A model generated the notes under the pieces. The model was not told where the DNA came from and did not search any database. It saw only the letters and a program-made list of their open reading frames with translations. This document shows positions 30,579 to 63,924 of a stretch of 64,000 nucleotides of DNA, piece by piece (position 1 is the first letter of the stretch; every line of letters starts with the position of its first letter). The stretch lies in IMG/VR virus record IMGVR_UViG_3300042473_001540, positions 245,757 through 309,756 of that record; one strand, given 5' to 3'. The translations under genes were made by a program, and so were the position numbers.

Positions 30579-30581
30579 CGC

Positions 30582-30824: not shown

Positions 30825-30863
30825 CATATTGACAACCTTTGGGGTTTCTGATACGCTTTAAGT

Positions 30864-31529: not shown

Positions 31530-31579
31530 GATATGTTATGCCTCTACATACAGGCCGGTGGCATACCAACCAGTGACAT

Positions 31580-31615: not shown

Positions 31616-31699
31616 CGGCAGATTGTAACTAGCCATGTATTGAAATTCATACCTCCTTTTAATTTTTTCCAAGAGTGATTGTCAATTTAAATAAGTGTT

Positions 31700-46245: not shown

Positions 46246-48023
46246 ACTTGATCATCCTCAAAAACGTCACAATCAAAAACTTCATGAGTGTGGGTGCTGT
46301 TACACAATCAGTTACTCTCACACAACCTGGCTTGACTCTTGTATTGGGCGAGAATCTAGACTTGGGCGGCAACGGCAACCGGAATGGTGTTGGCAAATCG
46401 ACGCTGATTTCAGCCATTTGTTATGCCCTGTATGGTCAAGCTCTTACTAACATCAAGAAAAACAATCTCATCAACAGCATCAACAAAAAGAACATGGTGG
46501 TGAGTATTGAGTTTGAAGCCCACGGCAACAGCTACAAAATTGAACGTGGCCGTGCCCCTAGTTTTTTCCGCTATGTTGTAAATGATGAATCAGTAAATGA
46601 AAACAAAAGTGCAGACGAAGCTCAAGGCGAAAACAAAGATACTCAGAAAGAGATTGAGAAGGTATTGGGCATCAGCCACACCATGTTCAAACACATTGTG
46701 GCTTTGAACACCTATACTGAGCCATTTTTGAGCATGGGTGCTGGAAAACAGCGAGAAATAATTGAAGAGCTGTTGGGAATTACATTACTGTCTCAGAAGG
46801 CAGAAAACCTCAAAAAGCTTATTCAAACAACCAAACAAACTATTGAACAAGAAGAGTTCAAAATACATACTATCAAAAACAGCAATACACGTATTTTGAG
46901 CACTATTGAAAGTTTGAATCAAAAAACCCAACAGTGGGATACTCAACATCAGAACAAAATTCAAGACTTGGAAAATGCACTAGATGCTTTGAGTCATCTT
47001 GATGTTGAGCAGGAAATTCAAAGTCACAAAGACAATCTTGTGTATCGTGAACTTCAAACAGCATTGAAGAATGTGCGCAGCCAAAGCCAAACAAAAACAC
47101 AGCATGGAACACAGCTGAAGGCGCAACAAAACAACTGGTTAACTCAGTATAGTCAAATTCAAGACCACAACTGCGCAATGTGTGGTCAAAAGATTCATGA
47201 CGAGAAACAAACACATCTGCTGGACGACCTTGAGCACAAAATTACCAAACTGGACAGCAGCATTCAAACACTGGAACAGGAATGCCTGAGTTTGACACAA
47301 GAACTGGATGAGCTCATGGGTCTGTCTAGTGCTGTATCGCTAAACCAAACATTTTACAAAAGCATTGATGAGGCATATGAGCATCGAAACAGTCTCACAC
47401 TTCTTAGTGGTGAACTGGACAAACTTAAGCTTGAAACCAATCCTTATCAAGCCCAAGTGGGTAATTTAAATGACACACTGCAAGAAGTCACTTATGATTC
47501 ACTAAATGAACTCAGCCAACTCAAAGACCATCAAGAGTTTCTCTTGAAGCTGCTAACAAACAAAGACAGCTTCATCCGAAAGCGTATTATTGATCAAAAC
47601 CTCAGCTACTTGAATCACAGACTGGGTGAATATCTAGCTGGATTGATGTTGCCACACCAAGTTAAATTCAGCAACGACTTGGGAGTTGAGATCATGCATA
47701 TGGGCGTAGACTTTGACTTTGACAGTCTCAGCCGAGGTGAACGCACAAGAGTTTGTTTGGCACTCAGCTGGGCATTCCGAGACATTTTTGAAAACATGAA
47801 CACCAGCATCAACTTCATGGCTGTTGATGAGATCCTTGATGTGGGACTTGACAGCACAGGACTTGAAAGATCTCTAGAGACGCTTAAGGCTATGAGCAGA
47901 GATCGGAACAAGAACATTTTGTTGATCTCACATAGAGAAGAGCTAACAAGTCGCTGCGATCGAGTTTTGTATGTTATCAAAGAGTTAGGTTTCACTCGTT
48001 TCAGCTATGAAAGCGGTGAGTAA
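46242..48023 (+). CDS. gp46: recombination ATPase subunit (Rad50/SbcC-like)
   Basis: NGVGKST Walker A, CAMC zinc hook, LSRGE signature, AVDEILD Walker B, ISH. Confidence 0.93.
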   Translation: MNLIILKNVTIKNFMSVGAVTQSVTLTQPGLTLVLGENLDLGGNGNRNGVGKSTLISAICYALYGQALTNIKKNNLINSINKKNMVVSIEFEAHGNSYKIERGRAPSFFRYVVNDESVNENKSADEAQGENKDTQKEIEKVLGISHTMFKHIVALNTYTEPFLSMGAGKQREIIEELLGITLLSQKAENLKKLIQTTKQTIEQEEFKIHTIKNSNTRILSTIESLNQKTQQWDTQHQNKIQDLENALDALSHLDVEQEIQSHKDNLVYRELQTALKNVRSQSQTKTQHGTQLKAQQNNWLTQYSQIQDHNCAMCGQKIHDEKQTHLLDDLEHKITKLDSSIQTLEQECLSLTQELDELMGLSSAVSLNQTFYKSIDEAYEHRNSLTLLSGELDKLKLETNPYQAQVGNLNDTLQEVTYDSLNELSQLKDHQEFLLKLLTNKDSFIRKRIIDQNLSYLNHRLGEYLAGLMLPHQVKFSNDLGVEIMHMGVDFDFDSLSRGERTRVCLALSWAFRDIFENMNTSINFMAVDEILDVGLDSTGLERSLETLKAMSRDRNKNILLISHREELTSRCDRVLYVIKELGFTRFSYESGE

Positions 48024-51105: not shown

Positions 51106-51939
51106 TTAGTCGAAAAAACTTGTGGGATCAAAGTCAATTGACTGGCTCCAAGTGTGTGAGCAACCGTCGCATTGAAAAGAGGTTTCGGTATCAATACCAG
51201 TTTTGTTGAGCTCTTTCAACTTGTCGATGATGGCGTTGGCACTGGTTGTGGGAATACCTTTCACAAACTCTTGAATGTATTCTTGATTGGTGACCAGTTC
51301 ACCACTACTGATTATTTTGATTTCAGTTATGCTCATGGCCATGATGTCCAATGTGCGTTTGGCCATGTGATTCACTTGTTTGGTCACACTACTGATCTTT
51401 TCTGCATCAGTTGTGTCTGTTTCTTGTAACACTTTGATGCTTCTGGCTTGTTCCACTTCATTCAACAGTTGTAGATTTCTCTGCTCAAAGTTGTAAGGAC
51501 GCAGGAAAACTTGGAGTGCTCCATCTATTTCAATATAGGTGGGGCCTTCAACATAAGTTTGTGTTTCGATAAATGCAGAGAGGTCTATACCAAAGTTGTG
51601 CTCTTTTCCACAACTGGGACATGTGGTGTCTATTTCCATAGTTGACCCTGCACTGGCAATTCTTATGGCAACAAGTAGGGTGTTGATGTCAGGCTCCACA
51701 AGCTTCTTGGGATCTTTGACTCCAGGAACACAGTTTCGGAAAACACTCAACAATGCATCGCCATTCAACAGCGCATCAGGAGTTTTCAACATGATTTGAT
51801 CAATAGCAGTCAACGGATACACTGCCATTTCGCCATTGGCTGAAGTCTCAAGGAAATCACTAGGATAAAATTTGCCTCGTGTTGGCAATTGTGCATAGGC
51901 CTTGGGTGTGTGAAAGTATTGACTCAATGGATTACTCAT
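51106..51939 (-). CDS. baseplate hub assembly chaperone (gp26-like)
   Basis: NPL..YF..P..Y..LPTRGKFY, T.DE/Q..LKTPDALLNG, D...LLVAIRIAS, CPSC..CDGC; TAAATA on minus at 51977-51982. Confidence 0.8.
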   Translation of the reverse strand: MSNPLSQYFHTPKAYAQLPTRGKFYPSDFLETSANGEMAVYPLTAIDQIMLKTPDALLNGDALLSVFRNCVPGVKDPKKLVEPDINTLLVAIRIASAGSTMEIDTTCPSCGKEHNFGIDLSAFIETQTYVEGPTYIEIDGALQVFLRPYNFEQRNLQLLNEVEQARSIKVLQETDTTDAEKISSVTKQVNHMAKRTLDIMAMSITEIKIISSGELVTNQEYIQEFVKGIPTTSANAIIDKLKELNKTGIDTETSFQCDGCSHTWSQSIDFDPTSFFD

Positions 51940-52025
51940 TACTGGCGCCCTATTATCTAAGTATGTTATTCCCTAGTATTTAAGGGGCTTAAATATGGGT
52001 AGTCTCCTGTTGTGAGAAAATTTGT

Positions 52026-54350
52026 ATGAGTTTTACAGCTAGTGAATTGAAAGATATCAGCAAGAATTGGGCCCAGGAGCGCACTCTCGGAGAGTTGCGT
52101 GACAAGATGGCGTCAAACAACAGTATTTTGGCTGCTATTGCTAAAGAAAAGTTCAACTTAGATGCTGCAACTATTCGCTCATTTGAAGATGCTATTGATG
52201 ATGCCAAAGATGGCTTGACAGAACTTCAAAATAGTGCGGAGAAAGCTAAAAGGGCTCAGGTCAATCAACTGCGTCATGAACAACGCATGCAAGGCTATGA
52301 ACAGGAAATCAAAGGCAATTACAAACGCAGTGTTGATGATTTACGCTCAAGCTTAGACAAAATGAGTCGATTTGACAGCAGTAGACTGTATGAAGGTGTC
52401 ACAAGTGGTATCAACAGCTTAAGCTATAATTTCCGTAAGGCAGATGGTAGTGCAACTGGGTTAAGCACAGCATTTGCTGGCTTGAACAAAGTGGTGGCTG
52501 TTGTTGCTGCTGGTGTGGGAATTTTTGCTAGCGGAATGCCAGCTTTTCAGGCCATGGCAAACACCGGTGTTACTTTTGGCGGCAGTCTTGAAAAGATGCA
52601 GGAAATGGTTGGTCGTACAGGTTTGAAGCTGGAAGAGTTTCAAGGACTTGTTGGGCAATTTGGTACTACAATTGGTGGAGTGGGTGAAGAAAATTTTGCC
52701 AAATTGATTCGGGCAACACAAACAGCTACTAGGGAGTTTGGTATGTACGGCCAGACGTCTCAACAACAGGCTGAGTCCGTTAGTTTCTTTGTGAACAGCT
52801 TAGTCGAAGGTGGGCTTTCATTCCAGCAAGCAAGCGCAATGAACGAACAAGGCACTGCACAATATTTGCGTGAGCTTACAGCACTTACTATTTTAACTGG
52901 CAAAGATAGAAAAACATTAGAGGCTAGACAAAAAGAGCTAGATCAAGATAGATTTATTAGACTTCGGGTTAGGCAATTGGAACAGACCAATCCTGAAGCG
53001 GCAGCAACATTTAAGAAAAACACTGGCCAATTGGCAATGGACATAGGGCCTAAATTGACAAGAGCCATAGCAGGCATGCAATATGGGCTTATGCCTCCTG
53101 ACGAGCAAATGCGCGCCTTTATGAGCATAGGCGGGACAATGTCTGGAATGGAGCAATTGTCTAGGCAGCTAACATCAGGATCTACCTTAGACATGATGGA
53201 AGGAGCTGGGAATTTAAAACGTAATTTTAGCCAAGGACAGGGCTTAAATGATTTTGTAACACAGGCGTATCTGGGAAGTAAGTACGCAGGAGCAGGTGAC
53301 ATAGCTGATGAATTATATGGAGACGCAGCACGGGCAAAGGCGGCTGAAGCGCAGCCAGGAGGTATGCAGAGGATACTTGATATCTTCACCGGAAGAGGTG
53401 GAAACTTAGATCAAGCTACTACTGCCATGCAAAAAGTGACTATGGATACTGCTCGTATCACTGGTGACTTCAAGGCAGCGCTCTGGGCAGCTACACAACA
53501 GTTGGGCTTGTTTACGAAAGTTCTTGAACCCTTGGCAGCAGCAACTGGCGCAGGCGCAGGAGCAGCAAACTCATTTTATGGAATGGCTGCCAGTGGTATG
53601 TCCGGAGCAGCTTCGGCCTTAATGACAGGAGCTGCTGTGGCATTGATGCCTAAATTGCTGGCAAGTACAGCTTTAAAAGCTGCAATACCACGGTTACTGG
53701 GAGGAGGAGGCTTGGGTTTGACTTCAATGCTGGGCTCAACAGGAATGATGTCTGGTATGATGGGCGGGGCTGGTAATCTTGCTGCTAGAGGAGGGTTGTT
53801 AGGAATGACAGGAAATCGCTTACTAGGTTCGGGGTTAAGTAGAGGCATTTTAGGAGGAGGTTTAGGAGGACTCGCAGGAGGGATGGCGGGCGCAGGACTT
53901 GGTAGCATGCTGGGCCTTGGCTCATTTGGTAGTGGTGCCTTAGGCGTATTAGGTGGGGCAGCAGGCGGCTTCTTGATGGGTGGGCCGGTGGGGGCACTTG
54001 TAGGTGGTCTGGGTGCTGCACTACCTATGCTTATAAGTTCAGCAAGTGCATCAGAAGCAAGGCCAGGTGATCAAACTGGCAATGCTGGTGGTTTATTACA
54101 AGATTCAACTGCACTTGTTGAAATGCAAGCAAGCAGCACGTCATATGTTTCTGCTATGGCTGCACTTGTAAGTAGAGTAGCAGCACAAGCCACTATGACT
54201 AGTCTTGCTCCACCAATAGCACCGCAAAACGATGCACTATTAGGTATGGTCACTACCTTGAACAGCACAGTGGCAGCACAAACACCCTACATCCAAGATC
54301 AAGCAAGACAAGCACGTATCACAGCTGGAATAATTGGTGACTTTGCCTAG
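52026..54350 (+). CDS. tape measure protein (gp29-like)
   Basis: Long helical Ala/Gly-rich protein with GG..GG hydrophobic tract; divergent from gp26-like; TAAATA 51990-51995. Confidence 0.65.
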   Translation: MSFTASELKDISKNWAQERTLGELRDKMASNNSILAAIAKEKFNLDAATIRSFEDAIDDAKDGLTELQNSAEKAKRAQVNQLRHEQRMQGYEQEIKGNYKRSVDDLRSSLDKMSRFDSSRLYEGVTSGINSLSYNFRKADGSATGLSTAFAGLNKVVAVVAAGVGIFASGMPAFQAMANTGVTFGGSLEKMQEMVGRTGLKLEEFQGLVGQFGTTIGGVGEENFAKLIRATQTATREFGMYGQTSQQQAESVSFFVNSLVEGGLSFQQASAMNEQGTAQYLRELTALTILTGKDRKTLEARQKELDQDRFIRLRVRQLEQTNPEAAATFKKNTGQLAMDIGPKLTRAIAGMQYGLMPPDEQMRAFMSIGGTMSGMEQLSRQLTSGSTLDMMEGAGNLKRNFSQGQGLNDFVTQAYLGSKYAGAGDIADELYGDAARAKAAEAQPGGMQRILDIFTGRGGNLDQATTAMQKVTMDTARITGDFKAALWAATQQLGLFTKVLEPLAAATGAGAGAANSFYGMAASGMSGAASALMTGAAVALMPKLLASTALKAAIPRLLGGGGLGLTSMLGSTGMMSGMMGGAGNLAARGGLLGMTGNRLLGSGLSRGILGGGLGGLAGGMAGAGLGSMLGLGSFGSGALGVLGGAAGGFLMGGPVGALVGGLGAALPMLISSASASEARPGDQTGNAGGLLQDSTALVEMQASSTSYVSAMAALVSRVAAQATMTSLAPPIAPQNDALLGMVTTLNSTVAAQTPYIQDQARQARITAGIIGDFA

Positions 54351-54415: not shown

Positions 54416-56173
54416 ATGGCTTGGAAAAAATATTTCACAACAGTACCGAGTCAAGCTAGACTCACTGCAAGACTAGCAGAAATCAACAAAGACAACAGTC
54501 AAGGTGCAACCACTACAAAATTCAGCAGTTATTTGCCTGAAGTCTATGCTGGTGCTCCAAACCGAGTTGAACGCTATGTGGCTTATGAACAAGCTGATTT
54601 AGATAGTGAAATCAATCGCAGCTTGGACACTATTGCTGAGTTCTGCACACAAAACCAAAGTGATGATGAGCCTATTCCTTTCCGATTTATTTGGAAAGGT
54701 GATGTTACTGAAACTGAAACAGAACTTTTGGCCAGTGCACTTCAACAATGGTGCAGCATCAATAAACTGAATCAACGAATCTTCAAAATATTCCGTAATA
54801 CTGTCAAATACGGTGATCAATTTTTCGTCCGAGATCCAGAAACCTATGAGCTGTTGTGGGTAGATTCAGCCAAAGTGGAAAAAATCATTGTCAATGAGGC
54901 ACAAGGCAAAAAAATTGAACAATATGTGATTAGAGATTTGGATTTCAATTTACAAAGTCTAGTGGCAACCAACCCTCTTGTGCATGATCAATACAGTTTC
55001 CCAGGAGGTTACCCTCGTAGTGCGAACCCAGCAGCTGGTGCAGGCAACATCAACTATGGACAGCCCACAACACCTGGCGGCCGTACCAGCAGATTTTACA
55101 ATCCAGCCAACAGCATGGCAATTGATGCCAACCACGTGGTGCATCTCAGTTTAAGTGAAGGCTTGGATCAATATTGGCCTTTTGGCACCAGCATCATTGA
55201 AGCAGTTTACAAAACTTACAAACAAAAAGACCTTTTGGAAGACTGCATTCTCATTTACCGTATTGTGCGTGCACCTGAGCGCAGAGTGTTTAAGATTGAC
55301 GTGGGTCAGCTGCAAGGTCAACGTGCCATGCAGTATGTTGAAAGAGTCAAAAACGAAATTTACCAAAGGCGACTCCCAAACCGCACAGGTGGTGGCTCAA
55401 GTATTATTGACAGCGCCTATAATCCCATAAGCATTACAGAAGATTTCTTCCTTGCAACCAACAGTGAACAACGCGGCACAACTATTGACACTTTGAACGC
55501 TGGCGAAAACTTGGGCACTATTGACGACTTGAAATACTTCAACAACAAGTTGATGCGCGGGCTGGGTATTCCCAGCAGCTATTTGCCCACTGGACCAGAT
55601 GATGGCACAGCAGTTTACAACGATGGCAAAGTGGGAACAGCATTTATCCAAGAGTATAGATTCAACAAATATTGCCAAAGATTGCAGAACAGTCTTGCGC
55701 CAACATTGGATATGGAATTTAAATTGTTTTTGAAGTTCCGTGGCATTGAGGTACACAGCAGTTTGTTTGAGTTGGCATTTAACGTTCCACAAAGTTTCAG
55801 TCAATATCGCAACATGAGCATTGACACTGAGCGTGTTAACCTCTTCAGTTCAGCTATGAACAGTGATGCAAGAGCTTACATGAGCAAGAGATATGCGCTC
55901 AAGCGTTATCTAGGATGGACAGAAGAAGATATTCTGGAAAATGAGCGGATGTGGAAAGAAGAAAACAACGACAAAGTCAAAGGCAAGACTGGCACCAGCC
56001 CCATTGAAGACAGGGGTGTGGGACTGGGATCAATAGGGATACGCCCTTCACCAGAGCCTGATTTTGGTATGGGTGGACCTGAGATGCCTCCTGAAGCCCC
56101 GCTTGAGACACCGGGATTTGAAACACCTGAAGTTGCTCCAGGTGCTGAAACACCTCCAACTGAAACACAGTAA
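54416..56173 (+). CDS. gp20: portal protein
   Basis: W.KYF, ALD.IAEF, KYGDQFF, LEDCILIYRIVRAPERRVFKIDVG, EDFF..RGT.IDTL.GE; TAAATA 54383-54388. Confidence 0.95.
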   Translation: MAWKKYFTTVPSQARLTARLAEINKDNSQGATTTKFSSYLPEVYAGAPNRVERYVAYEQADLDSEINRSLDTIAEFCTQNQSDDEPIPFRFIWKGDVTETETELLASALQQWCSINKLNQRIFKIFRNTVKYGDQFFVRDPETYELLWVDSAKVEKIIVNEAQGKKIEQYVIRDLDFNLQSLVATNPLVHDQYSFPGGYPRSANPAAGAGNINYGQPTTPGGRTSRFYNPANSMAIDANHVVHLSLSEGLDQYWPFGTSIIEAVYKTYKQKDLLEDCILIYRIVRAPERRVFKIDVGQLQGQRAMQYVERVKNEIYQRRLPNRTGGGSSIIDSAYNPISITEDFFLATNSEQRGTTIDTLNAGENLGTIDDLKYFNNKLMRGLGIPSSYLPTGPDDGTAVYNDGKVGTAFIQEYRFNKYCQRLQNSLAPTLDMEFKLFLKFRGIEVHSSLFELAFNVPQSFSQYRNMSIDTERVNLFSSAMNSDARAYMSKRYALKRYLGWTEEDILENERMWKEENNDKVKGKTGTSPIEDRGVGLGSIGIRPSPEPDFGMGGPEMPPEAPLETPGFETPEVAPGAETPPTETQ

Positions 56174-56181
56174 ATATCAAG

Positions 56182-58158
56182 ATGAATACAAATATCACAA
56201 AGACCAATGGCACTACGCTGGCAAGTATTCCGCCAGGACAGTATAACAGCACAGTTTCCAGTTTGATCCTATTTGGTAAGAATTTTGCCAATTACGGTAC
56301 TTATTTGAATGAAAATCTTGTTCATCTCATGGAAAATTTTGCCGACCAAAGTCCTCCACAAAGTCCCACACAAGGACAGCTTTGGTACAAAACCACAGAC
56401 AAACAAATGTATGTTTGGGAAGGCAGTGTTTGGAAACTGCTAAATGCAGAAAGCCTGCAACAGATTGCTGATGCAATTGTTAAAAATCGCATTTACGTTG
56501 CAGAAAGTGGTAATGATACCAACAGTGGACAAAGTTGGTATAGCGCCAAGCGAACTGTGAAAGCTGCATGTGCTGAAGCAGCTAGACAAATTGCCACAGG
56601 TGCATTCCGACCTGATCACACAGCTATATTAGTAGCAGCTGGTGACTATACTGAAGACTGTCCTATTGAAATTCCGCCAGGTGTCAGCATTATTGGCGAT
56701 AATCTTAGAGCTGTTTCCATACGACCAAGAGTCGCAACTACTGATGTATTTTATTTGAACAGCAAGTGTTATGTGTATGGCATTACTGTAAGAGATCATA
56801 GATTGAATCCATCAGCATTGGATATAACTCCAGCAGGTTATGCCAACACAAGTGGAGTGAATACATCTGCACTGATCTCTACAACTCGACAAACAGGATT
56901 TGCCTTTGGCTTTGCTCCAGGTGCAGACATCTTGGTCAGTCCCTATGTACAAAACTGTTCCAGCATTAGTGGCGATCCAGACACTGGATCAGGGATTTAC
57001 CCAGGTGGTGGCGGTGTGTTGATTGATCCCAGTGTTTTGGGACCCAATAATAGGATTCACAGCATTGTTATTGACGCATTTACTCAAATCAATCTTGGTG
57101 GTATCGGCGTCAAAGTCATTGGCAAAGGCTACATGCAGTTGGTGAGTTTTTTCGTTAACTTCTGCCAGTTTGGCTTGCTGTGCCTTGATGGTGGTCACGT
57201 GACTGCATTGAACAGCAATTGCAGTTTTGGCAATTATGCTCTTTGGAGTCAAGGACACCGGTATCTTGAAACCACTGACAGCCCTGTGGCTGTAAATCAA
57301 ACTTGGGCCACCAATGGTGTCAGTTCTGATTTTGTCACAACGGGTGGCACTTATGTTTTGCCAAATCAATTCAGTGACTTGGAAGTGCAATTTTTAGACA
57401 CTGCAACACCGTTGCTGCCCACTGTTGACTATACAATATCAAAAGGTGTAACAGCGGGTGGTTTGCCTTGTTCAGTTATTAGCTTGAAGTCTTTGCCCAT
57501 AGCTGGCCGGCAATTGCGAGCCAGGATCAAGTTTGGCTCCTTGATTGAAGCCAGCGGCTATACCATGAGCTATGCTGGTGCTGGCTTGGATTATGCCAAA
57601 CTCAGCCCCAGTCAAGATGGCAGTGGCTACGCTGATCCCAACAAATATACTATTGCACTAGCTGGTGGACGTGTATTCCATACCACAACTGACGAAAGCG
57701 GAGACTTTTATGTGGGGGCTGTGACACCCAATCCAGCGTTTCAAGTTGGCGGATTGACTATTGCCAATGGCGGAGGCAGCTATAACGTAGGGGATACATT
57801 GAATTTCATTACCCCAGCCAACGTTAACAGCACCTATGCTGTGCCCACAACACTTAAGGTTTTGAGTGTGTCCAGTGGTGTTATTACAAGTGTTGCGATT
57901 CTTATTCCTGGATACTATCTACTTTCGGCGCCAGGTAGCACAACAATTGGCAGTTTGCCCACAAATCCCATTAGTGCAACGTCAACAAGTGGTGGTGGAT
58001 CGTCAGCTACTTTTAACTTCGTGTGGGAGAAACCTCCTGCCAGACCCAGTTTCCGCATAAATCAGAGACGAGGTGCTATTGATGGACGCAGCTTTTATCA
58101 AAGCATCTTTGGATTTATGACTCCCTTTATACTTGCTCTTTCACGCAAAGGATCTTAA
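56182..58158 (+). CDS. tail fibre/spike-like structural protein with pectin-lyase-like beta-helix
   Basis: LFGKN..YG..LNENLVHLMENFA..P..GQLWY anchor; IYVAESGND..AKRTVKAA; SPYVQNCS; TAAATA 56171-56176. Confidence 0.7.
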   Translation: MNTNITKTNGTTLASIPPGQYNSTVSSLILFGKNFANYGTYLNENLVHLMENFADQSPPQSPTQGQLWYKTTDKQMYVWEGSVWKLLNAESLQQIADAIVKNRIYVAESGNDTNSGQSWYSAKRTVKAACAEAARQIATGAFRPDHTAILVAAGDYTEDCPIEIPPGVSIIGDNLRAVSIRPRVATTDVFYLNSKCYVYGITVRDHRLNPSALDITPAGYANTSGVNTSALISTTRQTGFAFGFAPGADILVSPYVQNCSSISGDPDTGSGIYPGGGGVLIDPSVLGPNNRIHSIVIDAFTQINLGGIGVKVIGKGYMQLVSFFVNFCQFGLLCLDGGHVTALNSNCSFGNYALWSQGHRYLETTDSPVAVNQTWATNGVSSDFVTTGGTYVLPNQFSDLEVQFLDTATPLLPTVDYTISKGVTAGGLPCSVISLKSLPIAGRQLRARIKFGSLIEASGYTMSYAGAGLDYAKLSPSQDGSGYADPNKYTIALAGGRVFHTTTDESGDFYVGAVTPNPAFQVGGLTIANGGGSYNVGDTLNFITPANVNSTYAVPTTLKVLSVSSGVITSVAILIPGYYLLSAPGSTTIGSLPTNPISATSTSGGGSSATFNFVWEKPPARPSFRINQRRGAIDGRSFYQSIFGFMTPFILALSRKGS

Positions 58159-58161
58159 CAT

Positions 58162-58632
58162 ATGCCTGCACCTATTTTTAACTTTCGTAATGTCAAAGTT
58201 AGAGTTACAAATGATCAACCCACAACCATTTACAAAGTTTCAAGTTACGATCAAACTATTCCCAACACAACATTGCCTCCAGGTGTAGATCCAACTGAAG
58301 TCAGTATTGTGTTGTTGACTGTTCAATGCAGCAACATTACAGGCAGTCCCAGCAGTCCTACTCTACGGAAAACCATCAATCTCAGTGTATGGATTGATAA
58401 TCCTCCTGATCCAGCCTATCTGCCCACTGGTAGACGTTACCTTGTTAACAATTACACAATTATTCCCAACAACGCTTTTGACCCCTTGAATGGCAATTTG
58501 ATCATGAGCAGCGGAGATACCTTGGTTGTACAAGTAAGTAATCCTCCAGCAGAAACAACCAATACCAGTACTGATAACTGTGTTGATGTTGTTGTAAGCC
58601 TATTGGAAATTGCCAATGCGACTGCCAATTAA
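58162..58632 (+). CDS. small virion structural protein
   Basis: F.FRN..L...GDTL..D..VSLLE pattern; co-transcribed with fibre genes. Confidence 0.6.
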   Translation: MPAPIFNFRNVKVRVTNDQPTTIYKVSSYDQTIPNTTLPPGVDPTEVSIVLLTVQCSNITGSPSSPTLRKTINLSVWIDNPPDPAYLPTGRRYLVNNYTIIPNNAFDPLNGNLIMSSGDTLVVQVSNPPAETTNTSTDNCVDVVVSLLEIANATAN

Positions 58633-58641
58633 GGACTAAGC

Positions 58642-59196
58642 ATGCCAAAGCTACTTGATAACCGCGTTGTTGGATCAGCTGATCTTATTGATGTGCAACT
58701 GGAAGGTGTTCCAGCTGGCTTGGTATTGAAAGTCTCTGCCAACGGAGAGCAATTCTTTTTTGGGCAACAAATTGGACCACCTGGACCTCCAGGTATTATT
58801 GGCACAGCAGGGAGCCCTGGCCCTCAAGGACCACCAGGAGATGACACATTTGTTGTTGGTCCACCTGGGCCTCCTGGTCCTCCTGGTATGGGAGGGGGAA
58901 TTCCTGGAAGCCCAGGAGTTCAAGGACCTCCAGGTCCAAACAAAGGCCCGCCAGGCGATCAAGGACCCAATGGTGATACTGGGCCAACAGGACCACAAAT
59001 AACTGATCAACAACATTATGCAGCAGTTTTCAGCACTGCTGGTCCACAAACATGGACAGCGCCACCTGGTGTTAGGCGTGCTAGAATAACACTGATCGGT
59101 GGAGGGGCTGGGGGAACGTTGGGCATTTATGTGCCTCCAGGTTCAGTTCCACCTACAGAAGGTGGCCCTGGGGCTGGCGGCGGAGGACTATTTTGA
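58642..59196 (+). CDS. collagen-like fibre paralog 1, N-terminal part
   Basis: [11 protein letters not shown]; Gly-X-Y repeats; [20 protein letters not shown]; stops inside Gly-rich domain. Confidence 0.8.
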
Positions 59197-59322
59197 TTAC
59201 CATAAGTAGTAACAGAGTCGTAGCATAAGACAGCCATTGTCTATTATAGGGATTTAAGGCTATGCAACGCTGGGACTAAACAGTTGGGGTGTAACAATGG
59301 ATAGCTATAGAGGATTACTGTT

Positions 59323-59703
59323 ATGAGTGGAAGCATTGGCGGATGGTTTACTGGCCTGGCTGGAGGCTCTGGAGCAATTTTACGGCTGTGGGTAGATATA
59401 ATCCCAAATGCCACCTATAATCTTCAAGTTGGTGCTGGAGGTCAAGGGCAAACATCTGCCACAGTTCCTCCAACAAATGGAGGCAACACTACTATGAGCG
59501 GACCAGGTGGAGTATTTTATTCTGCTGGAGGCGGCGTAGCAGTGAGTGGAGGCAATGCAGGCACGACACCAAACATAATTTGGCCCTTGGTACCTGGATC
59601 ATATCTCCATGGTTTGGCAGGTGCAGGAGGCGATCCCACTAAGCCAAATCCTGCAGGGTCAAATGGCTCAGCTGGCCTTATTTTGATTGAATGGATTAAC
59701 TAA
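59323..59703 (+). CDS. C-terminal half of Gly-rich domain of fibre paralog 1
   Basis: [21 protein letters not shown] matches C-halves of paralogs 2 and 3; same frame as 58642. Confidence 0.75.
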
Positions 59704-60632
59704 TGCCTCGCTTACTTGATAACCGTATTGTTGGCCCATCACGAGACGTTTTGACTACAACATTATATGGGGCACCTGCCGGGTATGTGTTACGAGTATC
59801 CCCCACAGGAGATACACTTGTGGTCACAACCCCAGGTGGCCCACTGGGTCCTCCAGGTCCTCCTGGCCCCGCTGGACTAGCAGGGCCTGTTGGGCCACCT
59901 GGAGCCAGCAGTGCATTAGTAGGTGATACAGGTCCCCCAGGTCCTCCTGGTCCTGCAGGAGGACCTCCTGGTCCTGCAGGTTTAACTGGACCAACGGGAC
60001 CAGGCGGGGGACCAGTGGGTCCTCCAGGACCGCCTGGAATTACTGGACCTATTGGGCCGCCTAGTGGCAATCAAGATATAAATGCAGCACAACTTGTGTC
60101 TCCTGGTGTATGGACAGCACCCCCAGGTGTGTTTTCTGTTAAGCTGACACTTATTGGAGCAGGGGGAGGCGGTAGTTTGCCCGTGAGTGGGGGTAGTCCA
60201 ATTGAATTTGACAATAGTGCTCAATCTGGTTGGACAATACAAGGTATTCCTGGAAGCAGTGGTGGCGTAAATGAACAATGGGTAACTGTGCAGGGCGGAC
60301 AAAATTACAATGTCACAATAGGAGTTGGGGGTAGTGGAGCTATAATATCTGGAGGTGGGGTGTACCCCAATGAAAATAATATTCCAACATATTACCCACA
60401 ATATATATACGTTCCACCAAGTCCTGGCACCCCTACAACATGGAGTGGTCCAGGCAGTCCCACAGTCGTAGCAGGCGGCGGCCCATCAGCAGGCACCCCC
60501 GCAGGAATTCTGGGTACTCCTGGAGTGAATTCCCCCTTAAGTGTGGGATTGGGTGTGGCAACAGTCTATGGATTTGGGGCAGGAGCAGAACAACAGGGCG
60601 GCCCTGGTGCAGCACTTATAGAATGGATTTAA
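59703..60632 (+). CDS. collagen-like fibre paralog 2
   Basis: MPRLLDNR; GPP repeats; WTAPPGV..IGAGGGG..AALIEW. Confidence 0.8.
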
Positions 60633-60635
60633 AAG

Positions 60636-61571
60636 ATGCCAAAACTTCTTGATAAGCGTATAATAGGCGGGTCTGCAGACGTCCTGAATACAATACTGAT
60701 TGGTGTGCCTGCTGGGTTGCCCCTTATAGTGGCGCCAACAGGCGCCGCTTTGCTGTTGGGTCCAGCCACAAGTTTTCCAGGCGTAAGGGGGCCTACAGGG
60801 CCTACAGGATTGGGAGGAGCGCCAGGATTTGGTGGATTTCCTGCCCCTCCAGGTGTAAAAGGTGCCACTGGGTCTGCTGGGCAGCCTGGCCCATTAGCAG
60901 GACCACCAGGCACACTAGGGGCAACCGGGCCAGTAGGTGGCGCTGGCCCGACCGGAGACCCAGGGGCAACAGGAACTCTTGGTTTTCCAGGACCCCAAGG
61001 GACAGGCCAAAAATTAGCAGTAGCTGGCTTTTTGTCTCCCAGTACATGGGCTGTGCCTGCTACAACTACTAATGTAAAAATCACAACTGTGGGCGGAGGA
61101 GGAGCAGGTGGTTGGGGAGCAATTTATACAACACAGGATTACACAGGTGCTGACGGCGGCTATGCTGATGGTCCCACTATAAAACTAATTGGAGGCAAGG
61201 GTGGACCAGGTGCCGCTATAGAAACATGGATACCGGTCACGGCAGGCAGTAATTTGCAAGTAATAGTTGGAGGTGGTGGGGCTGCTAACATTAGTAATTC
61301 TGGAAACCCTGGCACGCCCAGCCAACTTTTGGATCAAAGTGGAATAGCCCTTGTTACAGCAGGTGGTGGAAGCGGCGGCCTCAATGCCAACATCTTCACA
61401 CCCGGTGCCAATGGTGCGAGAGGAACTGCCACCAGCATAGGCCCGCTGGTTTACTTGAATGCTGACTTAGGCCTTAGGTTTGGTTACGGGGGCGTGGGCC
61501 GAGACGATACATCAGCATCAGGTGGACAACCAGGTGCAGTTCTTATAGAATATGTTGCTGTAGGTCCTTAA
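60636..61571 (+). CDS. collagen-like fibre paralog 3
   Basis: MPKLLDKR; Gly-X-Y repeats; WAVPA..VGGGG..AVLIEY. Confidence 0.8.
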
Positions 61572-62176
61572 CGCAGTGCTGGACCAGTTAACCAAGCCAC
61601 CAAAGTGCGGCGTAACCCACTTGTAACGGGTGTTACTCTATGCAGAACAAAGCTGGGAAAAACGGCTACAAGGCCTAGATCCTTGCTAATGGTTTGTGGA
61701 TCAGCGCCTAACTTAACTTGTAGATTGCCACCTTCATACTCACAGGGATCGCTCAATTGTAAAACTACACTGAGTTTTCGAGGACCGTGGTTTGTGGAAG
61801 TGATGCCACTGTCAATATGCCAGGTGTAGTGACCCTCATCATCCCCGTAGTATTCAGTGTATTGCAGGTGTTCACCAAATCCCCACAAATCAAAGCGAAA
61901 ATGCTGGCCATTTAAATTACGAACAATATTACCCAAGCGTTGATAAATCCAATCAGTGTCAGGACTGGCTTCAATCCAACTGGTTTTGCTTTTGCGTATT
62001 TGTTCATAATTTTGAGCGGGATCAAATCCACCAATTACCGCTTTTCCTGGCTGTCTAGCCTGCCCTAGTTGAATTATCTTTTTTATATCATCTCCTGAAA
62101 ATCCATCTTTCCAGGTTGCTACGTTTGCCTCACCAGCGCCAAAGCTGGGACTTGGTAAAAATTGATAAATTGACAC
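61568..62176 (-). CDS. 2OG-Fe(II) oxygenase (prolyl-4-hydroxylase-like)
   Basis: [38 protein letters not shown]; GTG start after AAGGGAG; promoter TTGCAG-N17-TATAGT (62227-62199). Confidence 0.85.
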
Positions 62177-62238
62177 TCTGTTGCTCCCTTTGATTTGAAC
62201 TATACAAGGGCCTTTGTTTCTCTGCAATAAATAGATTT

Positions 62239-62466
62239 ATGAGAGCAATGGATTTAGATAGTGCTGGCTATTACAGCCCAGACCAAGATCATTATACTAT
62301 GCAAAATCAGTATGACCCGCGTCGACCCAAGATTACAATCGCACATTTAAATCAAATGAAAAGAATGCGTAGTGCCAAGAAATTGGAAAATCTTGTGCGC
62401 AGAGATCTTTTGGGCCTGTTGTATGGCGCTCCCTCTGCTGAAGGCGGCGGAATGCCAGGCATGTAG
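62239..62466 (+). CDS. small prohead-cluster protein
   Basis: TAAATA 62228-62233; RRPKITI.HLN.M..R motif; precedes scaffold. Confidence 0.65.
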   Translation: MRAMDLDSAGYYSPDQDHYTMQNQYDPRRPKITIAHLNQMKRMRSAKKLENLVRRDLLGLLYGAPSAEGGGMPGM

Positions 62467-62562
62467 TCTAAAATTGCCTTATTTTCCATATAAATCCAAG
62501 TTATTCTTCAACTCCTTCTAAATAAACACAGAGTCTATCAACTTTACCAAAGGAGACAAACT

Positions 62563-63924
62563 ATGGCTAATAGCAAGCTGTTGAAGGTAATGGATTACCT
62601 TATCAACGAGCAAGAAGACAAGGCTCGTGACCTGTTGCACCAAATCTTCATTGAGAAGGCACGTGCAATTCACGAGGAAATGCTAAGTGACGACGAGCAT
62701 GAAATGGACAGGGACGAGGGCAGAAATCTCGGAGATGACATTGAATTTCACAAAGAAGAAATTGAGAATGAAGAGCATTATGGCGACGGCACAATGGAAG
62801 ATGTTGACCTCGATGACGCGGTTGAAGATCTCACAGTAAGTGCTGGCGATGATGAAGATGCTGACGATGTTGATGTTGACGTGGAAGACGATGACATAGA
62901 CATGGACGCTGAAGACGACATGGACGATGAAGACGACATGGACGATGAAGAAATGGATGCTGATGAAGCTGAAATGGATGCAGACATGGACCACGACGAG
63001 GAAGCTGAAGGCGAGCGTCTAAAAGACATTGAGCAAGCAATTGAAGAGTTGACTGCTGAATTTGAAGCTATGAAGGCTGAACTACATGGTGAACATGGTG
63101 ATGCAGAGGGAGATAAAATGCCCCTGCAGGAAATGGCAGATTCGGGCACTACGCCTGGTGGTAAACAGTACAAAATTAGCGGCGATTTTGAAACCGTGAC
63201 TGTTAATGGAACTTCTTACCCAATCCGCAAACTGAGTGGTCAAGGGGACAACCCCGACTACGTAATAGATGACATCCATATTGGTCAAACATATCAGGAC
63301 ATGCCACACCCTGACGCGGATGAGGAAGACTATGAGGAAGAATATGAAGTCTGGACAGAAGCACCAGGACAAGCAGATAACACCCTACACGTTGGTACGT
63401 GGGATGAGTGCTGGAACTTTTTAATTGATCAACTAGGAAGTGAAGACCATTCGCGTTTGAAAAGACGCCTACAGCGCGATGCTAGCGGTGGTGGCATGAG
63501 AGAAGGCTGGATGGACAACACTGACGACCTTGATGAAGACTATGATGATCTTGATGAAGCCATTGCCCTCGATACAGTTCATGTTGATCTCAAGAAAGTT
63601 GGCGAAGTTGGCTCAGGAAAGTTTTCTCGTAGTGATGTAAGCAAGCATAGCCCAGTGCCCAAAGGCGTTCAAAGCCCTGTTCCAGGTGCCAAGCCAGTTG
63701 TGACAGGCAAGGGATCAAAGGCTGATGGATATCATCTTCAATCTGCCCCCACAAGTGCCAGTATGAACTTGTCCAACCGTCGCAAGAAGGCTAGTGAAGA
63801 CATGACTCATGTCAGCAAGGAAGGCAGCACAAAGGCCATGTTGAACAAAGATCGTTCAGAAGGTTTTGGCGCCGCCAACGTTCGCAGCCCACTGGGCAGC
63901 ACCGGCACAACACCAAAGAAGTAA
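62563..63924 (+). CDS. acidic prohead core/scaffolding protein
   Basis: L.KVMDYLINEQEDKARDLLHQIFIEKAR.IHE; very D/E-rich; LKDIEQAIEELTAEFEAM; AAGGAG RBS; TAAATA 62519-62524. Confidence 0.75.
   Translation: MANSKLLKVMDYLINEQEDKARDLLHQIFIEKARAIHEEMLSDDEHEMDRDEGRNLGDDIEFHKEEIENEEHYGDGTMEDVDLDDAVEDLTVSAGDDEDADDVDVDVEDDDIDMDAEDDMDDEDDMDDEEMDADEAEMDADMDHDEEAEGERLKDIEQAIEELTAEFEAMKAELHGEHGDAEGDKMPLQEMADSGTTPGGKQYKISGDFETVTVNGTSYPIRKLSGQGDNPDYVIDDIHIGQTYQDMPHPDADEEDYEEEYEVWTEAPGQADNTLHVGTWDECWNFLIDQLGSEDHSRLKRRLQRDASGGGMREGWMDNTDDLDEDYDDLDEAIALDTVHVDLKKVGEVGSGKFSRSDVSKHSPVPKGVQSPVPGAKPVVTGKGSKADGYHLQSAPTSASMNLSNRRKKASEDMTHVSKEGSTKAMLNKDRSEGFGAANVRSPLGSTGTTPKK

What the first reader, a model, noticed from the sequence alone, without database searches (positions are those of the whole stretch)
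58642..62176. Prolyl-hydroxylase-like oxygenase tail-to-tail with three GPP-rich collagen fibre genes
Three paralogs share MP(K/R)LLD(N/K)R, Gly-X-Y runs rich in GPP, and a Gly-rich C-domain. The converging gene has the HxD..H..R 2OG-Fe(II) motif set (WHID, LHRV, G.RR) of P4H-like enzymes and its own sigma70-type promoter. Established: 4-hydroxyproline at the Y position stabilises collagen triple helices. Inference: the phage hydroxylates its own fibres, which may form homo- or heterotrimers.
Basis: inference. Interest (0 to 1): 0.62.

Follow-up and report, generated by a model that had tools for sequence, protein, structure and literature searches.

The report
Phage collagen fibres with prolyl hydroxylase
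A giant lake-water phage carries three collagen-like fibre genes back-to-back with a small prolyl-hydroxylase-type enzyme, and the same pairing recurs across many uncultured phages, so phages may make hydroxyproline-stabilised collagen, which is not yet shown chemically.

Summary
Three paralogous fibre genes each have an MP(K/R)LLD(N/K)R N-terminus, about 23-25 interrupted Gly-X-Y triplets and a glycine-rich C-terminal domain. They converge on a 202-aa 2OG-Fe(II) oxygenase, and the two stop codons overlap.

Corrections:
- Paralog 1 is split into two ORFs (184 + 126 aa), and relatives share the split.
- Only two paralogs are GPP-rich (8, 9 and 1 GPP).
- The "sigma70 promoter" is no better than chance.

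The oxygenase has the full HxD...H...R set. Its model (pLDDT 92) is closest to protein prolyl 4-hydroxylases, including the Chlorella-virus collagen P4H (Z 18.3).

- In 62 non-redundant phage loci with this enzyme, a collagen-like ORF ends within 1.5 kb upstream in 32/58 and starts within 1.5 kb downstream in 7/55.
- In the window's 35-member clade, no locus with enough flank lacks one.
- Enzyme-adjacent collagens carry Pro at the Y position, the P4H target (33/48 at 10% or more). Distant collagens in the same loci and genome do not (0/12).

Best reading: a dedicated collagen prolyl hydroxylase for the phage's own fibres (confidence about 0.6). Hydroxyproline itself is untested. I found no cultured phage with this clade and no paper describing the pairing.

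The parts
56182..58158 (+). 658-aa fibre-like protein, the first gene of the conserved cassette downstream of the portal gene
   Evidence: It matches PHROG tail-fibre and baseplate-wedge families at E down to 2e-42. A 650-, 577- or 658-aa gene sits at the same position in relatives L010, L012 and L096. The PA5oct head module has no such gene.
58162..58632 (+). 156-aa protein of unknown function, a conserved cassette member
   Evidence: It has no Pfam, PHROG or NCBIfam hit. A 150-, 138- or 156-aa gene occupies the same position in L010, L012 and L096.
58642..59196 (+). col1a: N-terminal anchor motif, collagen-like region (residues 45-119) and the first part of the glycine-rich domain
   Evidence: Gly-X-Y runs of 8+5+4+6 triplets, 8 GPP, Pro at X 58% and at Y 42%. 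PF01391 scores E=8e-4, below the cut-off. It aligns with col2 and col3.
59197..59322 (.). Spacer that splits paralog 1. It is in frame with both halves; counting col1a's own TGA, the 129 nt at 59194-59322 hold five stop codons. A GAGGA ribosome-binding site precedes the col1b ATG.
   Evidence: Sequence read directly. It has no copy elsewhere in the genome and no Rfam hit. In two lake strains 59165-59279 is replaced by 99 unrelated letters, a third strain shows dense substitutions, and no joined form was seen.
59323..59703 (+). col1b: the C-terminal remainder of the glycine-rich domain of paralog 1, translated separately
   Evidence: It aligns with the C-terminal 125-130 residues of col2 and col3 and ends LILIEWIN. 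The same split is found in L010 (195+132 aa) and L096 (205+132 aa).
59703..60632 (+). col2: collagen-like fibre protein with a glycine-rich C-terminal domain
   Evidence: Gly-X-Y runs of 8+5+5+5 triplets, 9 GPP, Pro at Y 43%. In the model, the C-terminal domain (residues 127-309) has a core pLDDT of 70-90. It matches viral 'glycine-rich domain' proteins and minor tail proteins (BFVD E=3e-10). It also matches, weakly, the Bxb1 tail tip, the ALK glycine-rich domain and the Pam3 fibre.
60636..61571 (+). col3: collagen-like fibre protein with a glycine-rich C-terminal domain
   Evidence: Gly-X-Y runs of 7+5+12 triplets, 1 GPP, Pro at Y 25%. PF21722 Gly_rich_2 scores E=2e-4 and PF01391 E=3e-4, both below their cut-offs. 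Homologues at 54% identity lie in the same cassette elsewhere.
61568..62176 (-). 202-aa 2OG-Fe(II) oxygenase of the prolyl-4-hydroxylase type; its stop codon overlaps that of col3
   Evidence: PF13640 at 53 bits and phrog_61. H120, D122, H179 and R189 are invariant. The model has pLDDT 92. VIA-align gives Z 19.3 to P. putida P4H, 18.3 to PBCV-1 vCPH and 16.2 to Chlamydomonas P4H. A PDB profile search matches B. anthracis P4H over the full length.
62177..62238 (.). 62-nt divergent intergenic region between the oxygenase and the 75-aa head-module gene; it would hold the oxygenase promoter
   Evidence: On the minus strand it reads TTGCAG-17 nt-TATAGT, then AAGGGAG, then the GTG start. The consensus scan did not call it.

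Best explanation
The region is a fibre cassette inserted into the head-gene cluster of a freshwater jumbo phage, between the portal gene and the small head proteins, scaffold and protease. It encodes a beta-helix-type fibre protein, a 156-aa unknown protein and three paralogous short collagen-like fibre proteins. Each paralog has a conserved N-terminal anchor, about 75 residues of interrupted Gly-X-Y and a glycine-rich, TNF/ALK-GRD-like tip domain.

The converging 202-aa gene encodes a soluble, single-domain Fe(II)/2-oxoglutarate prolyl hydroxylase. The proposed mechanism is as follows. The enzyme is made in the host cytoplasm from its own strand and hydroxylates Y-position prolines (X-Pro-Gly) of the still unfolded fibre chains. 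This raises the stability of their short, interrupted triple helices before or during trimerisation, which the C-terminal domain nucleates.

Shown here:
- the gene anatomy;
- the catalytic residues;
- the P4H-type fold;
- conserved linkage to collagen-like genes across many phages;
- restriction of Y-position proline to the enzyme-adjacent collagens.

Inferred, not shown:
- that proline is the residue modified and C4 the position;
- that the effect is helix stabilisation;
- that the proteins are virion fibres, and whether they sit on the head, neck or tail.
For: 1. Enzyme class.
- PF13640 at 53 bits against a cut-off of 27.
- HxD...H plus Arg at +10 are invariant in 43 homologues.
- R189 aligns with the 2OG-binding Lys of B. 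anthracis P4H, in a shared PVT.G motif.
- The model has pLDDT 92.
- The nine best structural neighbours are, PiuC apart, protein prolyl hydroxylases: P. putida P4H at Z 19.3, Trichoplax PHD 19.2, PBCV-1 viral collagen P4H 18.3, P4H-TM 16.6, OGFOD1 16.5, PHD2 16.5 and Chlamydomonas P4H 16.2. Human C-P4H-II follows at Z 14.8, and generic 2OG oxygenases such as AlkB score about 13 (Foldseek).

2. Linkage (62 clusters of oxygenases at 80% identity, from IMG/VR and other metagenome contigs).
- A collagen-like ORF ends within 1.5 kb upstream on the same strand in 32/58, and starts within 1.5 kb downstream in 7/55 (binomial p=7e-5).
- Collagen ORFs cover 34% of bases in the 3 kb upstream and 4% downstream.
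- On the oxygenase tree the window sits in a 35-row clade. There, every locus with enough flank has an adjacent collagen-like ORF (23 with Y-Pro, 8 with low Pro, 4 with flanks too short, 0 without). The label is clustered more than in any of 500 shuffles.

3. Substrate signature.
- Adjacent collagen ORFs have Pro at Y at 10% or more in 33/48. Collagen ORFs more than 2.1 kb away or elsewhere in the genome reach this in 0/12 (Fisher p=1.2e-5; Mann-Whitney p=1.7e-5).
- In the window's own genome col1, col2 and col3 have 42, 43 and 25% Pro at Y. Five other collagen-like ORFs have 1-9%, with Thr or Ser at Y instead.
- Y-position Pro is the only feature shared between the window's GPP-type collagens and the GNP/GSP/GTA-type collagens of other loci.

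4. The whole cassette, including the convergent oxygenase with overlapping or near-abutting stop codons, is conserved in three further lineages. Their oxygenase or col3 identity to the window is 54-79% (L010, L012, L096).

5. Established knowledge, not tested here: collagen P4Hs act on Y-position Pro in X-Pro-Gly, and 4-Hyp raises triple-helix stability.
Against: - There is no chemical evidence for hydroxyproline, and no cultured phage carries this clade. The best identity to any isolate genome is 46% or less.
- The 2OG-binding residue is Arg, as in PHD- and PKHD-type enzymes, not the Lys of canonical collagen P4Hs.
- By sequence, the strongest PDB hits are PKHD-type proteins of unknown substrate (Sbal_3634, PiuC).
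- By fold, enzymes that hydroxylate EF-Tu or HIF rank as high as the viral collagen P4H.
- About a third of adjacent collagens have under 10% Pro at Y, and one (L092) has none but 30% Lys at Y.
- More distant homologues in cyanophages, pelagiphages and a huge phage show no comparable adjacent collagen gene: at most 10 to 17 triplets, 1.6 kb or more away.
- The clusters are not fully independent phylogenetically.
- The complex prediction gave no verdict.
- No RNA data exist for this phage.
Confidence: 0.6

Rival explanations
1. The oxygenase modifies the adjacent collagen-like fibres, but not as a stabilising 4-hydroxylase of Y-position proline. It could make 3-Hyp, or hydroxylate Lys or Asn. 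Alternatively the hydroxyl group could mainly serve as an anchor for glycosylation, as in plant HRGPs and mimivirus collagen.
For: - The linkage evidence shows only that collagen is the partner, not which atom is modified.
- Many linked collagens have 30-46% Asn at X, and L092 has 30% Lys at Y with no Pro.
- The mimivirus lysyl hydroxylase is also a structural neighbour (Z 13.9).
- Extra genes often sit between the collagen gene and the oxygenase: a second PF13640 oxygenase, or a DUF6065-like protein of phrog_7084. This suggests multi-step modification in some phages.
Against: - In the window's own collagens Lys at Y is 0-4% and Asn is rare, while Pro at Y is 25-43%.
- Y-position Pro is the only feature common to the linked collagens.
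- The closest folds are prolyl 4-hydroxylases, ahead of lysyl and prolyl-3 hydroxylases (Z 19-16 against 13.9-12.4).
- No glycosyltransferase lies in the window cassette.
Confidence: 0.15
2. The oxygenase is an auxiliary or host-takeover enzyme acting on a host protein, for example EF-Tu or a ribosomal protein as with PPHD and OGFOD1, or on another phage protein. It lies next to fibre genes only because both ride in variable accessory cassettes.
For: - It belongs to phrog_61, which is categorised as 'moron, auxiliary metabolic gene and host takeover'.
- The top fold matches include the EF-Tu hydroxylase PPHD and OGFOD1.
- Distant homologues in cyanophages and pelagiphages sit in oxygenase arrays with no comparable adjacent collagen gene.
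- In the window the gene is on the opposite strand from the fibre genes.
- A virome paper states that the use of P4H by viruses 'remains cryptic' (PMC9301287).
Against: - Adjacency is directional and clade-wide: 32 upstream against 7 downstream, and no locus without a collagen in the 35-row clade.
- Gene gaps are often only 9-24 nt.
- Chance co-location would not explain why only the adjacent collagens carry Y-position Pro.
Confidence: 0.15
3. The oxygenase acts on a non-protein substrate, such as a nucleic acid base or a small molecule.
For: The 2OG oxygenase fold is shared with AlkB-type and small-molecule enzymes (Z about 12-13). The sequence-nearest PKHD proteins (PiuC, YbiX) have no established substrate.
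Against: - Protein prolyl hydroxylases stand about 3-6 Z units above AlkB and small-molecule enzymes.
- The profile aligns with B. anthracis P4H over its full length.
- The collagen linkage and the Y-Pro signature would be left unexplained.
Confidence: 0.05

Closest known systems
PBCV-1 (Chlorella virus) viral collagen prolyl 4-hydroxylase vCPH, PDB 5c5t
   Same: It is a small, single-domain, virus-encoded P4H. The fold is very similar (Z 18.3, rmsd 2.9 A over 166 residues). The idea that a virus hydroxylates its own proline-rich proteins is the same (Eriksson et al. 1999, as cited in PMC9301287).
   Different: Its host is a eukaryotic alga, not a bacterium. Sequence identity is only about 18%. 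From memory, canonical collagen-type P4Hs use Lys to bind 2OG, whereas this enzyme has Arg189. No tight gene pairing with a Gly-X-Y fibre gene is known to me for PBCV-1.
Bacillus anthracis P4H (PDB 3itq, 5hv0, 5iax)
   Same: It is a bacterial-world P4H of about 200 aa. It is the only collagen-type P4H detected over the full length by sequence profile (E=3e-5, residues 18-196). The two share a PVT.G motif before the 2OG-binding residue. It is reported to modify collagen-like peptides (Schnicker and Dey 2016, listed in PMC8968730).
   Different: It has Lys where this enzyme has Arg. Structural similarity is lower than to PHD-type enzymes (Z 14.4). It is a chromosomal gene rather than part of a phage fibre cassette.
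PKHD-type hydroxylases (YbiX, PiuC, Sbal_3634) and PHD/PPHD prolyl hydroxylases
   Same: These give the best sequence matches over the catalytic barrel (E=5e-14 to 2e-12) and the top fold matches. They share the Arg-type 2OG binding. JGI names many homologues 'PKHD-type hydroxylase'.
   Different: The NCBIfam equivalog scores are far below their cut-offs (64.6 against 143). The sequence match covers only the C-terminal half. Their substrates are EF-Tu, HIF or unknown, and none is linked to collagen-like genes.
Mimivirus collagen modification (L230 lysyl hydroxylase/glycosyltransferase, PDB 6ax6)
   Same: A virus encodes both collagen-like fibre proteins and a 2OG oxygenase that modifies them (stated in PMC8968730). 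It is a structural neighbour at Z 13.9. Giant-virus collagen-like and glycine-rich-domain proteins resemble the col2 model.
   Different: It targets Lys rather than Pro and is a bifunctional multidomain enzyme in a eukaryotic host. The window's collagens have almost no Lys at Y.
Ordinary phage and bacterial collagen-like fibre proteins (E. coli prophage collagens; mycobacteriophage glycine-rich minor tail proteins)
   Same: They have Gly-X-Y stalks with a C-terminal trimeric or glycine-rich tip. The col2 model matches glycine-rich-domain proteins, minor tail proteins and the Bxb1 tail tip.
   Different: The usual pattern is Pro at X with Thr, Ser or Gln at Y, as in the five other collagen-like ORFs of this same genome (Pro at Y 1-9%). 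The cassette collagens have 25-43% Pro at Y and a dedicated oxygenase next door.

Membership tests
2OG-Fe(II) oxygenase, P4Hc-type (Pfam PF13640) | Profile score above the curated threshold | tested here: met
   53.4 bits against a cut-off of 27, E=5e-14.
2OG-Fe(II) oxygenase, P4Hc-type (Pfam PF13640) | HxD...H iron triad plus a basic 2OG-binding residue about 10 residues after the distal His | tested here: met
   H120, D122, H179 and R189 are invariant in 43 homologues. R189 aligns with the 2OG-binding Lys of B. anthracis P4H.
2OG-Fe(II) oxygenase, P4Hc-type (Pfam PF13640) | Double-stranded beta-helix fold with an N-terminal alpha/beta extension, as in P4Hs | tested here: met
   The model has pLDDT 92. 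Z is 14-19 to protein prolyl hydroxylases over residues about 8-202.
Collagen prolyl 4-hydroxylase (C-P4H, vCPH, CrP4H, BaP4H) | Forms trans-4-hydroxyproline at X-Pro-Gly | not testable with these tools
   This needs an enzyme assay or mass spectrometry.
Collagen prolyl 4-hydroxylase (C-P4H, vCPH, CrP4H, BaP4H) | Lys as the 2OG C5-carboxylate ligand (from memory, for the canonical members) | tested here: not met
   The position is Arg189, invariant in the family.
Collagen prolyl 4-hydroxylase (C-P4H, vCPH, CrP4H, BaP4H) | Association with substrates that carry Pro at the Y position of Gly-X-Y | tested here: met
   Adjacent collagen ORFs have Pro at Y at 10% or more in 33/48, against 0/12 for distant ones. 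The window's three have 42, 43 and 25%.
PKHD-type hydroxylase YbiX/PiuC (NCBIfam NF003972-NF003975) | Equivalog score above the curated cut-off, with full-length match | tested here: not met
   The best score is 64.6 bits against a cut-off of 143, and only residues about 130-213 of the 219-aa ORF match.
Collagen triple-helix repeat protein (Pfam PF01391) | Profile score above threshold | tested here: not met
   19.6 and 21 bits against a cut-off of 27.2 for col1a and col3, and no hit for col2.
Collagen triple-helix repeat protein (Pfam PF01391) | Runs of strict Gly-X-Y periodicity rich in Pro | tested here: met
   There are 23-24 triplets per paralog, in 3-4 runs separated by breaks of 1-4 residues. 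Pro is 29-70% at X and 25-43% at Y. Triple-helix formation itself was not tested.
Glycine-rich domain (Pfam PF21722 Gly_rich_2; ALK-GRD-like fibre tips) | Profile score above threshold | tested here: not met
   Only col3 hits, at 22 bits against a cut-off of 24.3.
Glycine-rich domain (Pfam PF21722 Gly_rich_2; ALK-GRD-like fibre tips) | Fold resemblance to known glycine-rich domains of phage fibres | tested here: inconclusive
   BFVD hits to 'glycine-rich domain-containing' and minor tail proteins reach E=3e-10, but TM-scores are only about 0.3. PDB hits (Bxb1 tail tip, ALK GRD, Pam3 fibre) are at E of 1e-3 or weaker. The model has a mean pLDDT of 60.

The most novel reading that the evidence does not exclude
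A large clade of the abundant aquatic-phage '2OG-Fe(II) oxygenase / P4HA auxiliary metabolic genes' may not be metabolic at all. These genes may instead be dedicated collagen prolyl hydroxylases that co-evolved with a distinct class of Y-proline collagen-like fibre proteins. If so, hydroxyproline-stabilised collagen is made inside bacterial cells and built into bacteriophage virions, by a 200-aa single-domain enzyme that uses Arg rather than Lys for 2OG binding.
Probability: 0.5. Interest if true: 0.78.

Novelty: new variant of a known kind. Interest (0 to 1): 0.66.

Why it matters
Prokaryotic and phage collagen-like proteins are generally treated as hydroxyproline-free, and stabilised by other means. 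The review read here says only that giant viruses hydroxylate and glycosylate their collagen, and it sets phage collagens aside (PMC8968730). Virome studies count P4H-like genes as auxiliary metabolic genes whose use 'remains cryptic' (PMC9301287).

A conserved enzyme-substrate gene pair in phages would do three things:
1. Give that abundant gene family a concrete job in virion maturation.
2. Extend collagen hydroxylation to the bacterial-virus world.
3. Offer a small, soluble P4H that has evolved to work in bacterial cytoplasm, together with its natural substrates. That would be useful for making hydroxylated recombinant collagen in E. coli.

The claim is directly testable by co-expression and mass spectrometry.

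Tried and rejected
- Megablast of 54416-62300 against isolate phages found no match.
- Rfam and tRNA scans of the whole window found nothing, so the 129-nt spacer in paralog 1 is not a known RNA or intron family.
- The spacer as a mobile repeat is rejected: it has no second copy in the 310-kb genome.
- The spacer as a recent disruption or assembly error is rejected. The split recurs in L010 and L096 and in four lake strains, none of which shows a joined form. Readthrough or bypass is unlikely, given five in-frame stops and a ribosome-binding site plus ATG for the second half.
- The promoter and terminator scan gave nothing above shuffled expectation, and no terminator lies between the convergent genes.
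- A word-based homologue search with the col3 C-terminal domain returned only 4 close relatives, because low-complexity candidates swamped it. It says nothing about the domain's real range.
- The complex prediction for the oxygenase with col2 residues 40-125 gave no verdict (score 0.00). It is evidence neither for nor against binding.
- No RNA-seq run holds this phage, so expression and timing could not be examined.
- The second PF13640 gene of the genome (G000:C1:29230-29820) was considered as a partner. It is very divergent and has no adjacent collagen gene.
- Searches of isolate phage genomes with two other clade members found only cyanophage and pelagiphage homologues at 39% identity or less.
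- Literature searches for phage P4H plus collagen-like proteins found no paper describing this pairing. The library lacks most subscription journals.


Full report
**Where the window lies.** The window is the last 64 kb of a 309,756-bp IMG/VR virus record that CheckV rates 76% complete. It has a T4-type portal gene at 54416-56173 (PF07230, E=8e-101). The nearest cultured relatives of that portal are jumbo phages such as PA5oct and Atu_ph07, at about 50% identity. The region is near-identical in lake-water metagenomes from about 20 studies, and no RNA run holds it. There is no nucleotide-level match to any isolate phage.

**Check of the observation.** The finding's coordinates are accurate.

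- Layout after the portal gene, on the plus strand:
  - a 658-aa fibre-like protein (56182-58158) that matches PHROG tail-fibre and baseplate families;
  - a 156-aa unknown protein (58162-58632);
  - the collagen-like genes col1a (58642-59196), col1b (59323-59703), col2 (59703-60632) and col3 (60636-61571).
- The three paralogs begin MP(K/R)LLD(N/K)R and align throughout.
- Strict Gly-X-Y runs are 8+5+4+6, 8+5+5+5 and 7+5+12 triplets. GPP counts are 8, 9 and 1.
- The C-terminal halves are Gly-rich and end in a shared G.(V/L/I)LIE(W/Y) motif.
  - The col2 model has a beta-rich C-terminal domain with a core pLDDT of 70-90.
  - It resembles viral 'glycine-rich domain' proteins, mycobacteriophage minor tail proteins and giant-virus collagen-like proteins (BFVD E down to 3e-10).
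  - It also resembles, weakly, the Bxb1 tail tip, the ALK glycine-rich domain and the cyanophage Pam3 fibre.
  - Calling these fibre proteins is therefore reasonable.
- The converging gene (61568-62176, minus strand) most likely starts at the GTG at 62176.
  - That GTG is preceded by AAGGGAG.
  - Homologues are about 200 aa, and one at 98% identity is 202 aa.
  - Its stop codon overlaps that of col3.

Three corrections are needed.

1. Paralog 1 is split into two ORFs. The separating stretch is 129 nt, in frame, and holds five stop codons counting col1a's own TGA.
2. Only two paralogs are GPP-rich.
3. The proposed sigma70 promoter (TTGCAG-17-TATAGT) was not called by the scan. Promoter-like sites in the region are no more frequent than in shuffled sequence.

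**The enzyme.** It scores well above threshold for PF13640, the P4H-type 2OG-Fe(II) family, and belongs to phrog_61.

- In an alignment of 43 homologues, H120, D122, H179 and R189 are invariant.
- A profile search of the PDB matches PKHD-type proteins over the catalytic barrel, and B. anthracis P4H over nearly the whole length.
  - R189 aligns with that enzyme's 2OG-binding lysine, in a shared PVT.G motif.
- The AlphaFold model is confident (pLDDT 92).
- An exhaustive structural comparison puts protein prolyl hydroxylases at the top.

| Structure | Z |
|---|---|
| P. putida P4H | 19.3 |
| Trichoplax PHD | 19.2 |
| PBCV-1 viral collagen P4H | 18.3 |
| P4H-TM | 16.6 |
| OGFOD1 | 16.5 |
| PHD2 | 16.5 |
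| Chlamydomonas P4H | 16.2 |
| C-P4H-II | 14.8 |
| B. anthracis P4H | 14.4 |
| Unrelated 2OG oxygenases | about 13 and below |

Foldseek agrees with this ranking. The enzyme is therefore prolyl-hydroxylase-like by every available criterion. It is not a canonical collagen P4H, because it has Arg rather than Lys. It fails the curated thresholds for YbiX/PiuC equivalogs.

- Sampling and dereplication. I fetched 80 IMG/VR loci that encode relatives of the oxygenase and three contigs found by exact-protein look-up.
  - I scanned them for ORFs with at least 10 Gly-X-Y triplets in runs of five or more.
  - Dereplication at 80% oxygenase identity left 62 clusters.
- Position relative to the oxygenase.
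  - A collagen-like ORF ends within 1.5 kb upstream, on the same strand, in 32 of 58 clusters. One starts within 1.5 kb downstream in 7 of 55 (binomial p=7e-5).
  - Many gaps are only 9-24 nt, which suggests an operon.
  - Collagen-like ORFs cover 34% of the 3 kb upstream, 15% further upstream and 4% downstream.
- Position on the oxygenase tree.
  - The window groups with L010 and L012 (SH-aLRT 95) inside a 35-row clade.
  - In that clade, every locus with enough flank has an adjacent collagen-like ORF.
  - Loci without one lie in more distant clades.
- The window's own lineage is unusual only in orientation. Portal, fibre gene, small gene, collagen gene(s) and convergent oxygenase, followed by small head protein, scaffold-like protein, protease and major capsid protein, recur in L010, L012 and L096.
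- PA5oct has the same head module without the cassette. The cassette is therefore an insertion between the portal gene and the small head proteins.

**The substrate signature.** Position-specific composition of the Gly-X-Y runs separates two kinds of collagen-like ORF.

- ORFs next to the oxygenase carry Pro at Y, typically 10-50%.
  - In most phages these have almost no Pro at X and are of Gly-Asn-Pro, Gly-Ser-Pro or Gly-Thr-Ala type.
  - In the window's lineage they also have Pro at X.
- ORFs more than 2.1 kb away, and the five other collagen-like ORFs of the window's own genome, show the ordinary phage and bacterial pattern. That pattern is Pro at X with Thr, Ser or Gln at Y, and Pro at Y of only 0-9%.
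- Pro at Y of 10% or more occurs in 33/48 adjacent ORFs and 0/12 distant ones (Fisher p=1.2e-5; Mann-Whitney p=1.7e-5).
- Y-position proline in X-Pro-Gly is exactly the site that collagen P4Hs hydroxylate (established knowledge). It is also the only compositional feature shared by all the linked collagens.
- This covariation is hard to explain if the oxygenase acted on something else.

**Caveats.**

- Nothing here shows hydroxyproline.
- The clusters share ancestry, so the p-values overstate independence.
- About a third of the adjacent collagens fall below 10% Y-Pro. One (L092) has Lys rather than Pro at Y, which suggests some family members may be lysyl hydroxylases.
- More distant homologues in cyanophages, pelagiphages and a 735-kb phage sit in oxygenase arrays or other contexts and have no comparable collagen neighbour (at most 10 to 17 triplets, 1.6 kb or more away). 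The inference therefore applies to this clade and not to all phage 2OG oxygenases.
- The complex prediction gave no verdict.
- Whether the fibres sit on the head, neck or tail is unknown.
- Whether they form homo- or heterotrimers is also unknown.
  - col1 and col2 share an almost identical pattern of helix interruptions, which would allow mixed trimers but also follows simply from paralogy.
  - L012 manages with a single collagen gene.

**Comparison with what is known.** Virus-encoded collagen modification is established for eukaryotic viruses: the PBCV-1 P4H and the mimivirus lysyl hydroxylase/glycosyltransferase (cited in PMC9301287 and PMC8968730). B. anthracis P4H modifies collagen-like peptides.

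For bacteriophages, the papers I could search treat P4H-like genes as auxiliary metabolic genes of 'cryptic' use. Reviews of prokaryotic collagens set phage collagens aside. I found no paper describing an oxygenase-collagen gene pair in phages, but the library lacks most subscription journals. No cultured phage in the 2025 isolate collection carries a member of this clade above 46% identity.

I therefore rate it a new variant of a known kind. The chemistry is familiar and the fold is a familiar one, in a new host domain. It uses a distinct Arg-type enzyme lineage and has a distinct class of Y-Pro phage collagens as its apparent substrate.

**Verdict.** The P4H-like identity and the functional link to the adjacent collagen fibres are well supported by comparative evidence. 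The chemistry, the promoter and the trimer composition are not established.

- Confidence in 'dedicated prolyl hydroxylase of the phage's own collagen-like fibres': about 0.6.
- Interest: 0.66.

Noticed in passing
window 59194-59322 (between col1a and col1b); L010:8828-8857; L096:5635-5648: Paralog 1 is split within its glycine-rich domain into two separately translated ORFs, and three phage lineages share the split (184+126, 195+132 and 205+132 aa). The spacer is in frame but holds stop codons: five in the window, one in L010. It is the fastest-changing stretch among lake strains: two strains have 99 unrelated letters in its place, and none shows a joined form.
   Followed up: partly
L023:7264-7998, L064:7225-7998, L043:7255-7998 and about 12 other loci; L019:2779-3381, L039:5732-6382, L072:5537-6133: In many phages a third gene sits between the collagen gene and the oxygenase. 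It is either a roughly 245-aa protein of phrog_7084 (DUF6065-like by the ESM Atlas, no Pfam hit, motif EFLC..ED.G.IP.PYPA.K) or a second PF13640 oxygenase. This suggests a larger fibre-modification module. The window's genome has no homologue of the 245-aa protein.
   Followed up: partly
L092:1-1503 (collagen-like ORF 117 nt upstream of the oxygenase): This linked collagen has 30% Lys and 0% Pro at the Y position. Its oxygenase may be a lysyl rather than a prolyl hydroxylase.
   Followed up: no
L056:6464-7951; Pelagibacter phage HTVC008M locus L094:462-1856: A tryptophan-halogenase-family gene lies beside the oxygenase in L056 and in the HTVC008M locus. That locus also has a run of five 2OG or phytanoyl-CoA-type dioxygenase genes next to neck genes. 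'Ferrochelatase' annotations next to cyanophage oxygenases probably refer to oxygenase paralogs, since phrog_3531 also hits the window enzyme.
   Followed up: no
window 40183-42402 (-): A 739-aa protein combines DUF6267, a cytidylyltransferase-like domain and a C-terminal anti-CBASS Acb1 domain (E=1e-18). This looks like a fused counter-defence gene.
   Followed up: no
window about 30000-32000: G+C content drops from about 0.52 (1-30 kb, many short ORFs and an SNF2-type helicase at 28736-30343) to about 0.38-0.45 (32-56 kb, baseplate hub/lysozyme at 32920-35697, gp46/47-like nuclease genes at 45214-48023).
   Followed up: no
G000:C1:29230-29820 (outside the window): The genome has a second, very divergent PF13640 oxygenase with no collagen-like neighbour.
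   Followed up: partly
G000:C1:14476-18564, 51360-53024, 60396-62636, 69227-73204, 98253-100295 (outside the window): The same genome has five further collagen-like ORFs of 103-321 triplets. All are of the ordinary type, with Thr or Ser at Y and 1-9% Pro at Y.
   Followed up: partly
L012:9453-12606 and L096:1-2505: The portal genes of two related phages carry an intein (PF14890). The window's portal gene (585 aa) does not.
   Followed up: no
window 62563-63924 (+): A 453-aa, extremely acidic protein with long Asp/Glu runs has no family hit. It lies where relatives have a 323-436-aa gene before the prohead protease, so it is probably a scaffold or prohead-core protein. The 75-aa gene at 62239-62466 matches phrog_13986, and PA5oct has a 73-aa virion protein at the same position.
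   Followed up: no
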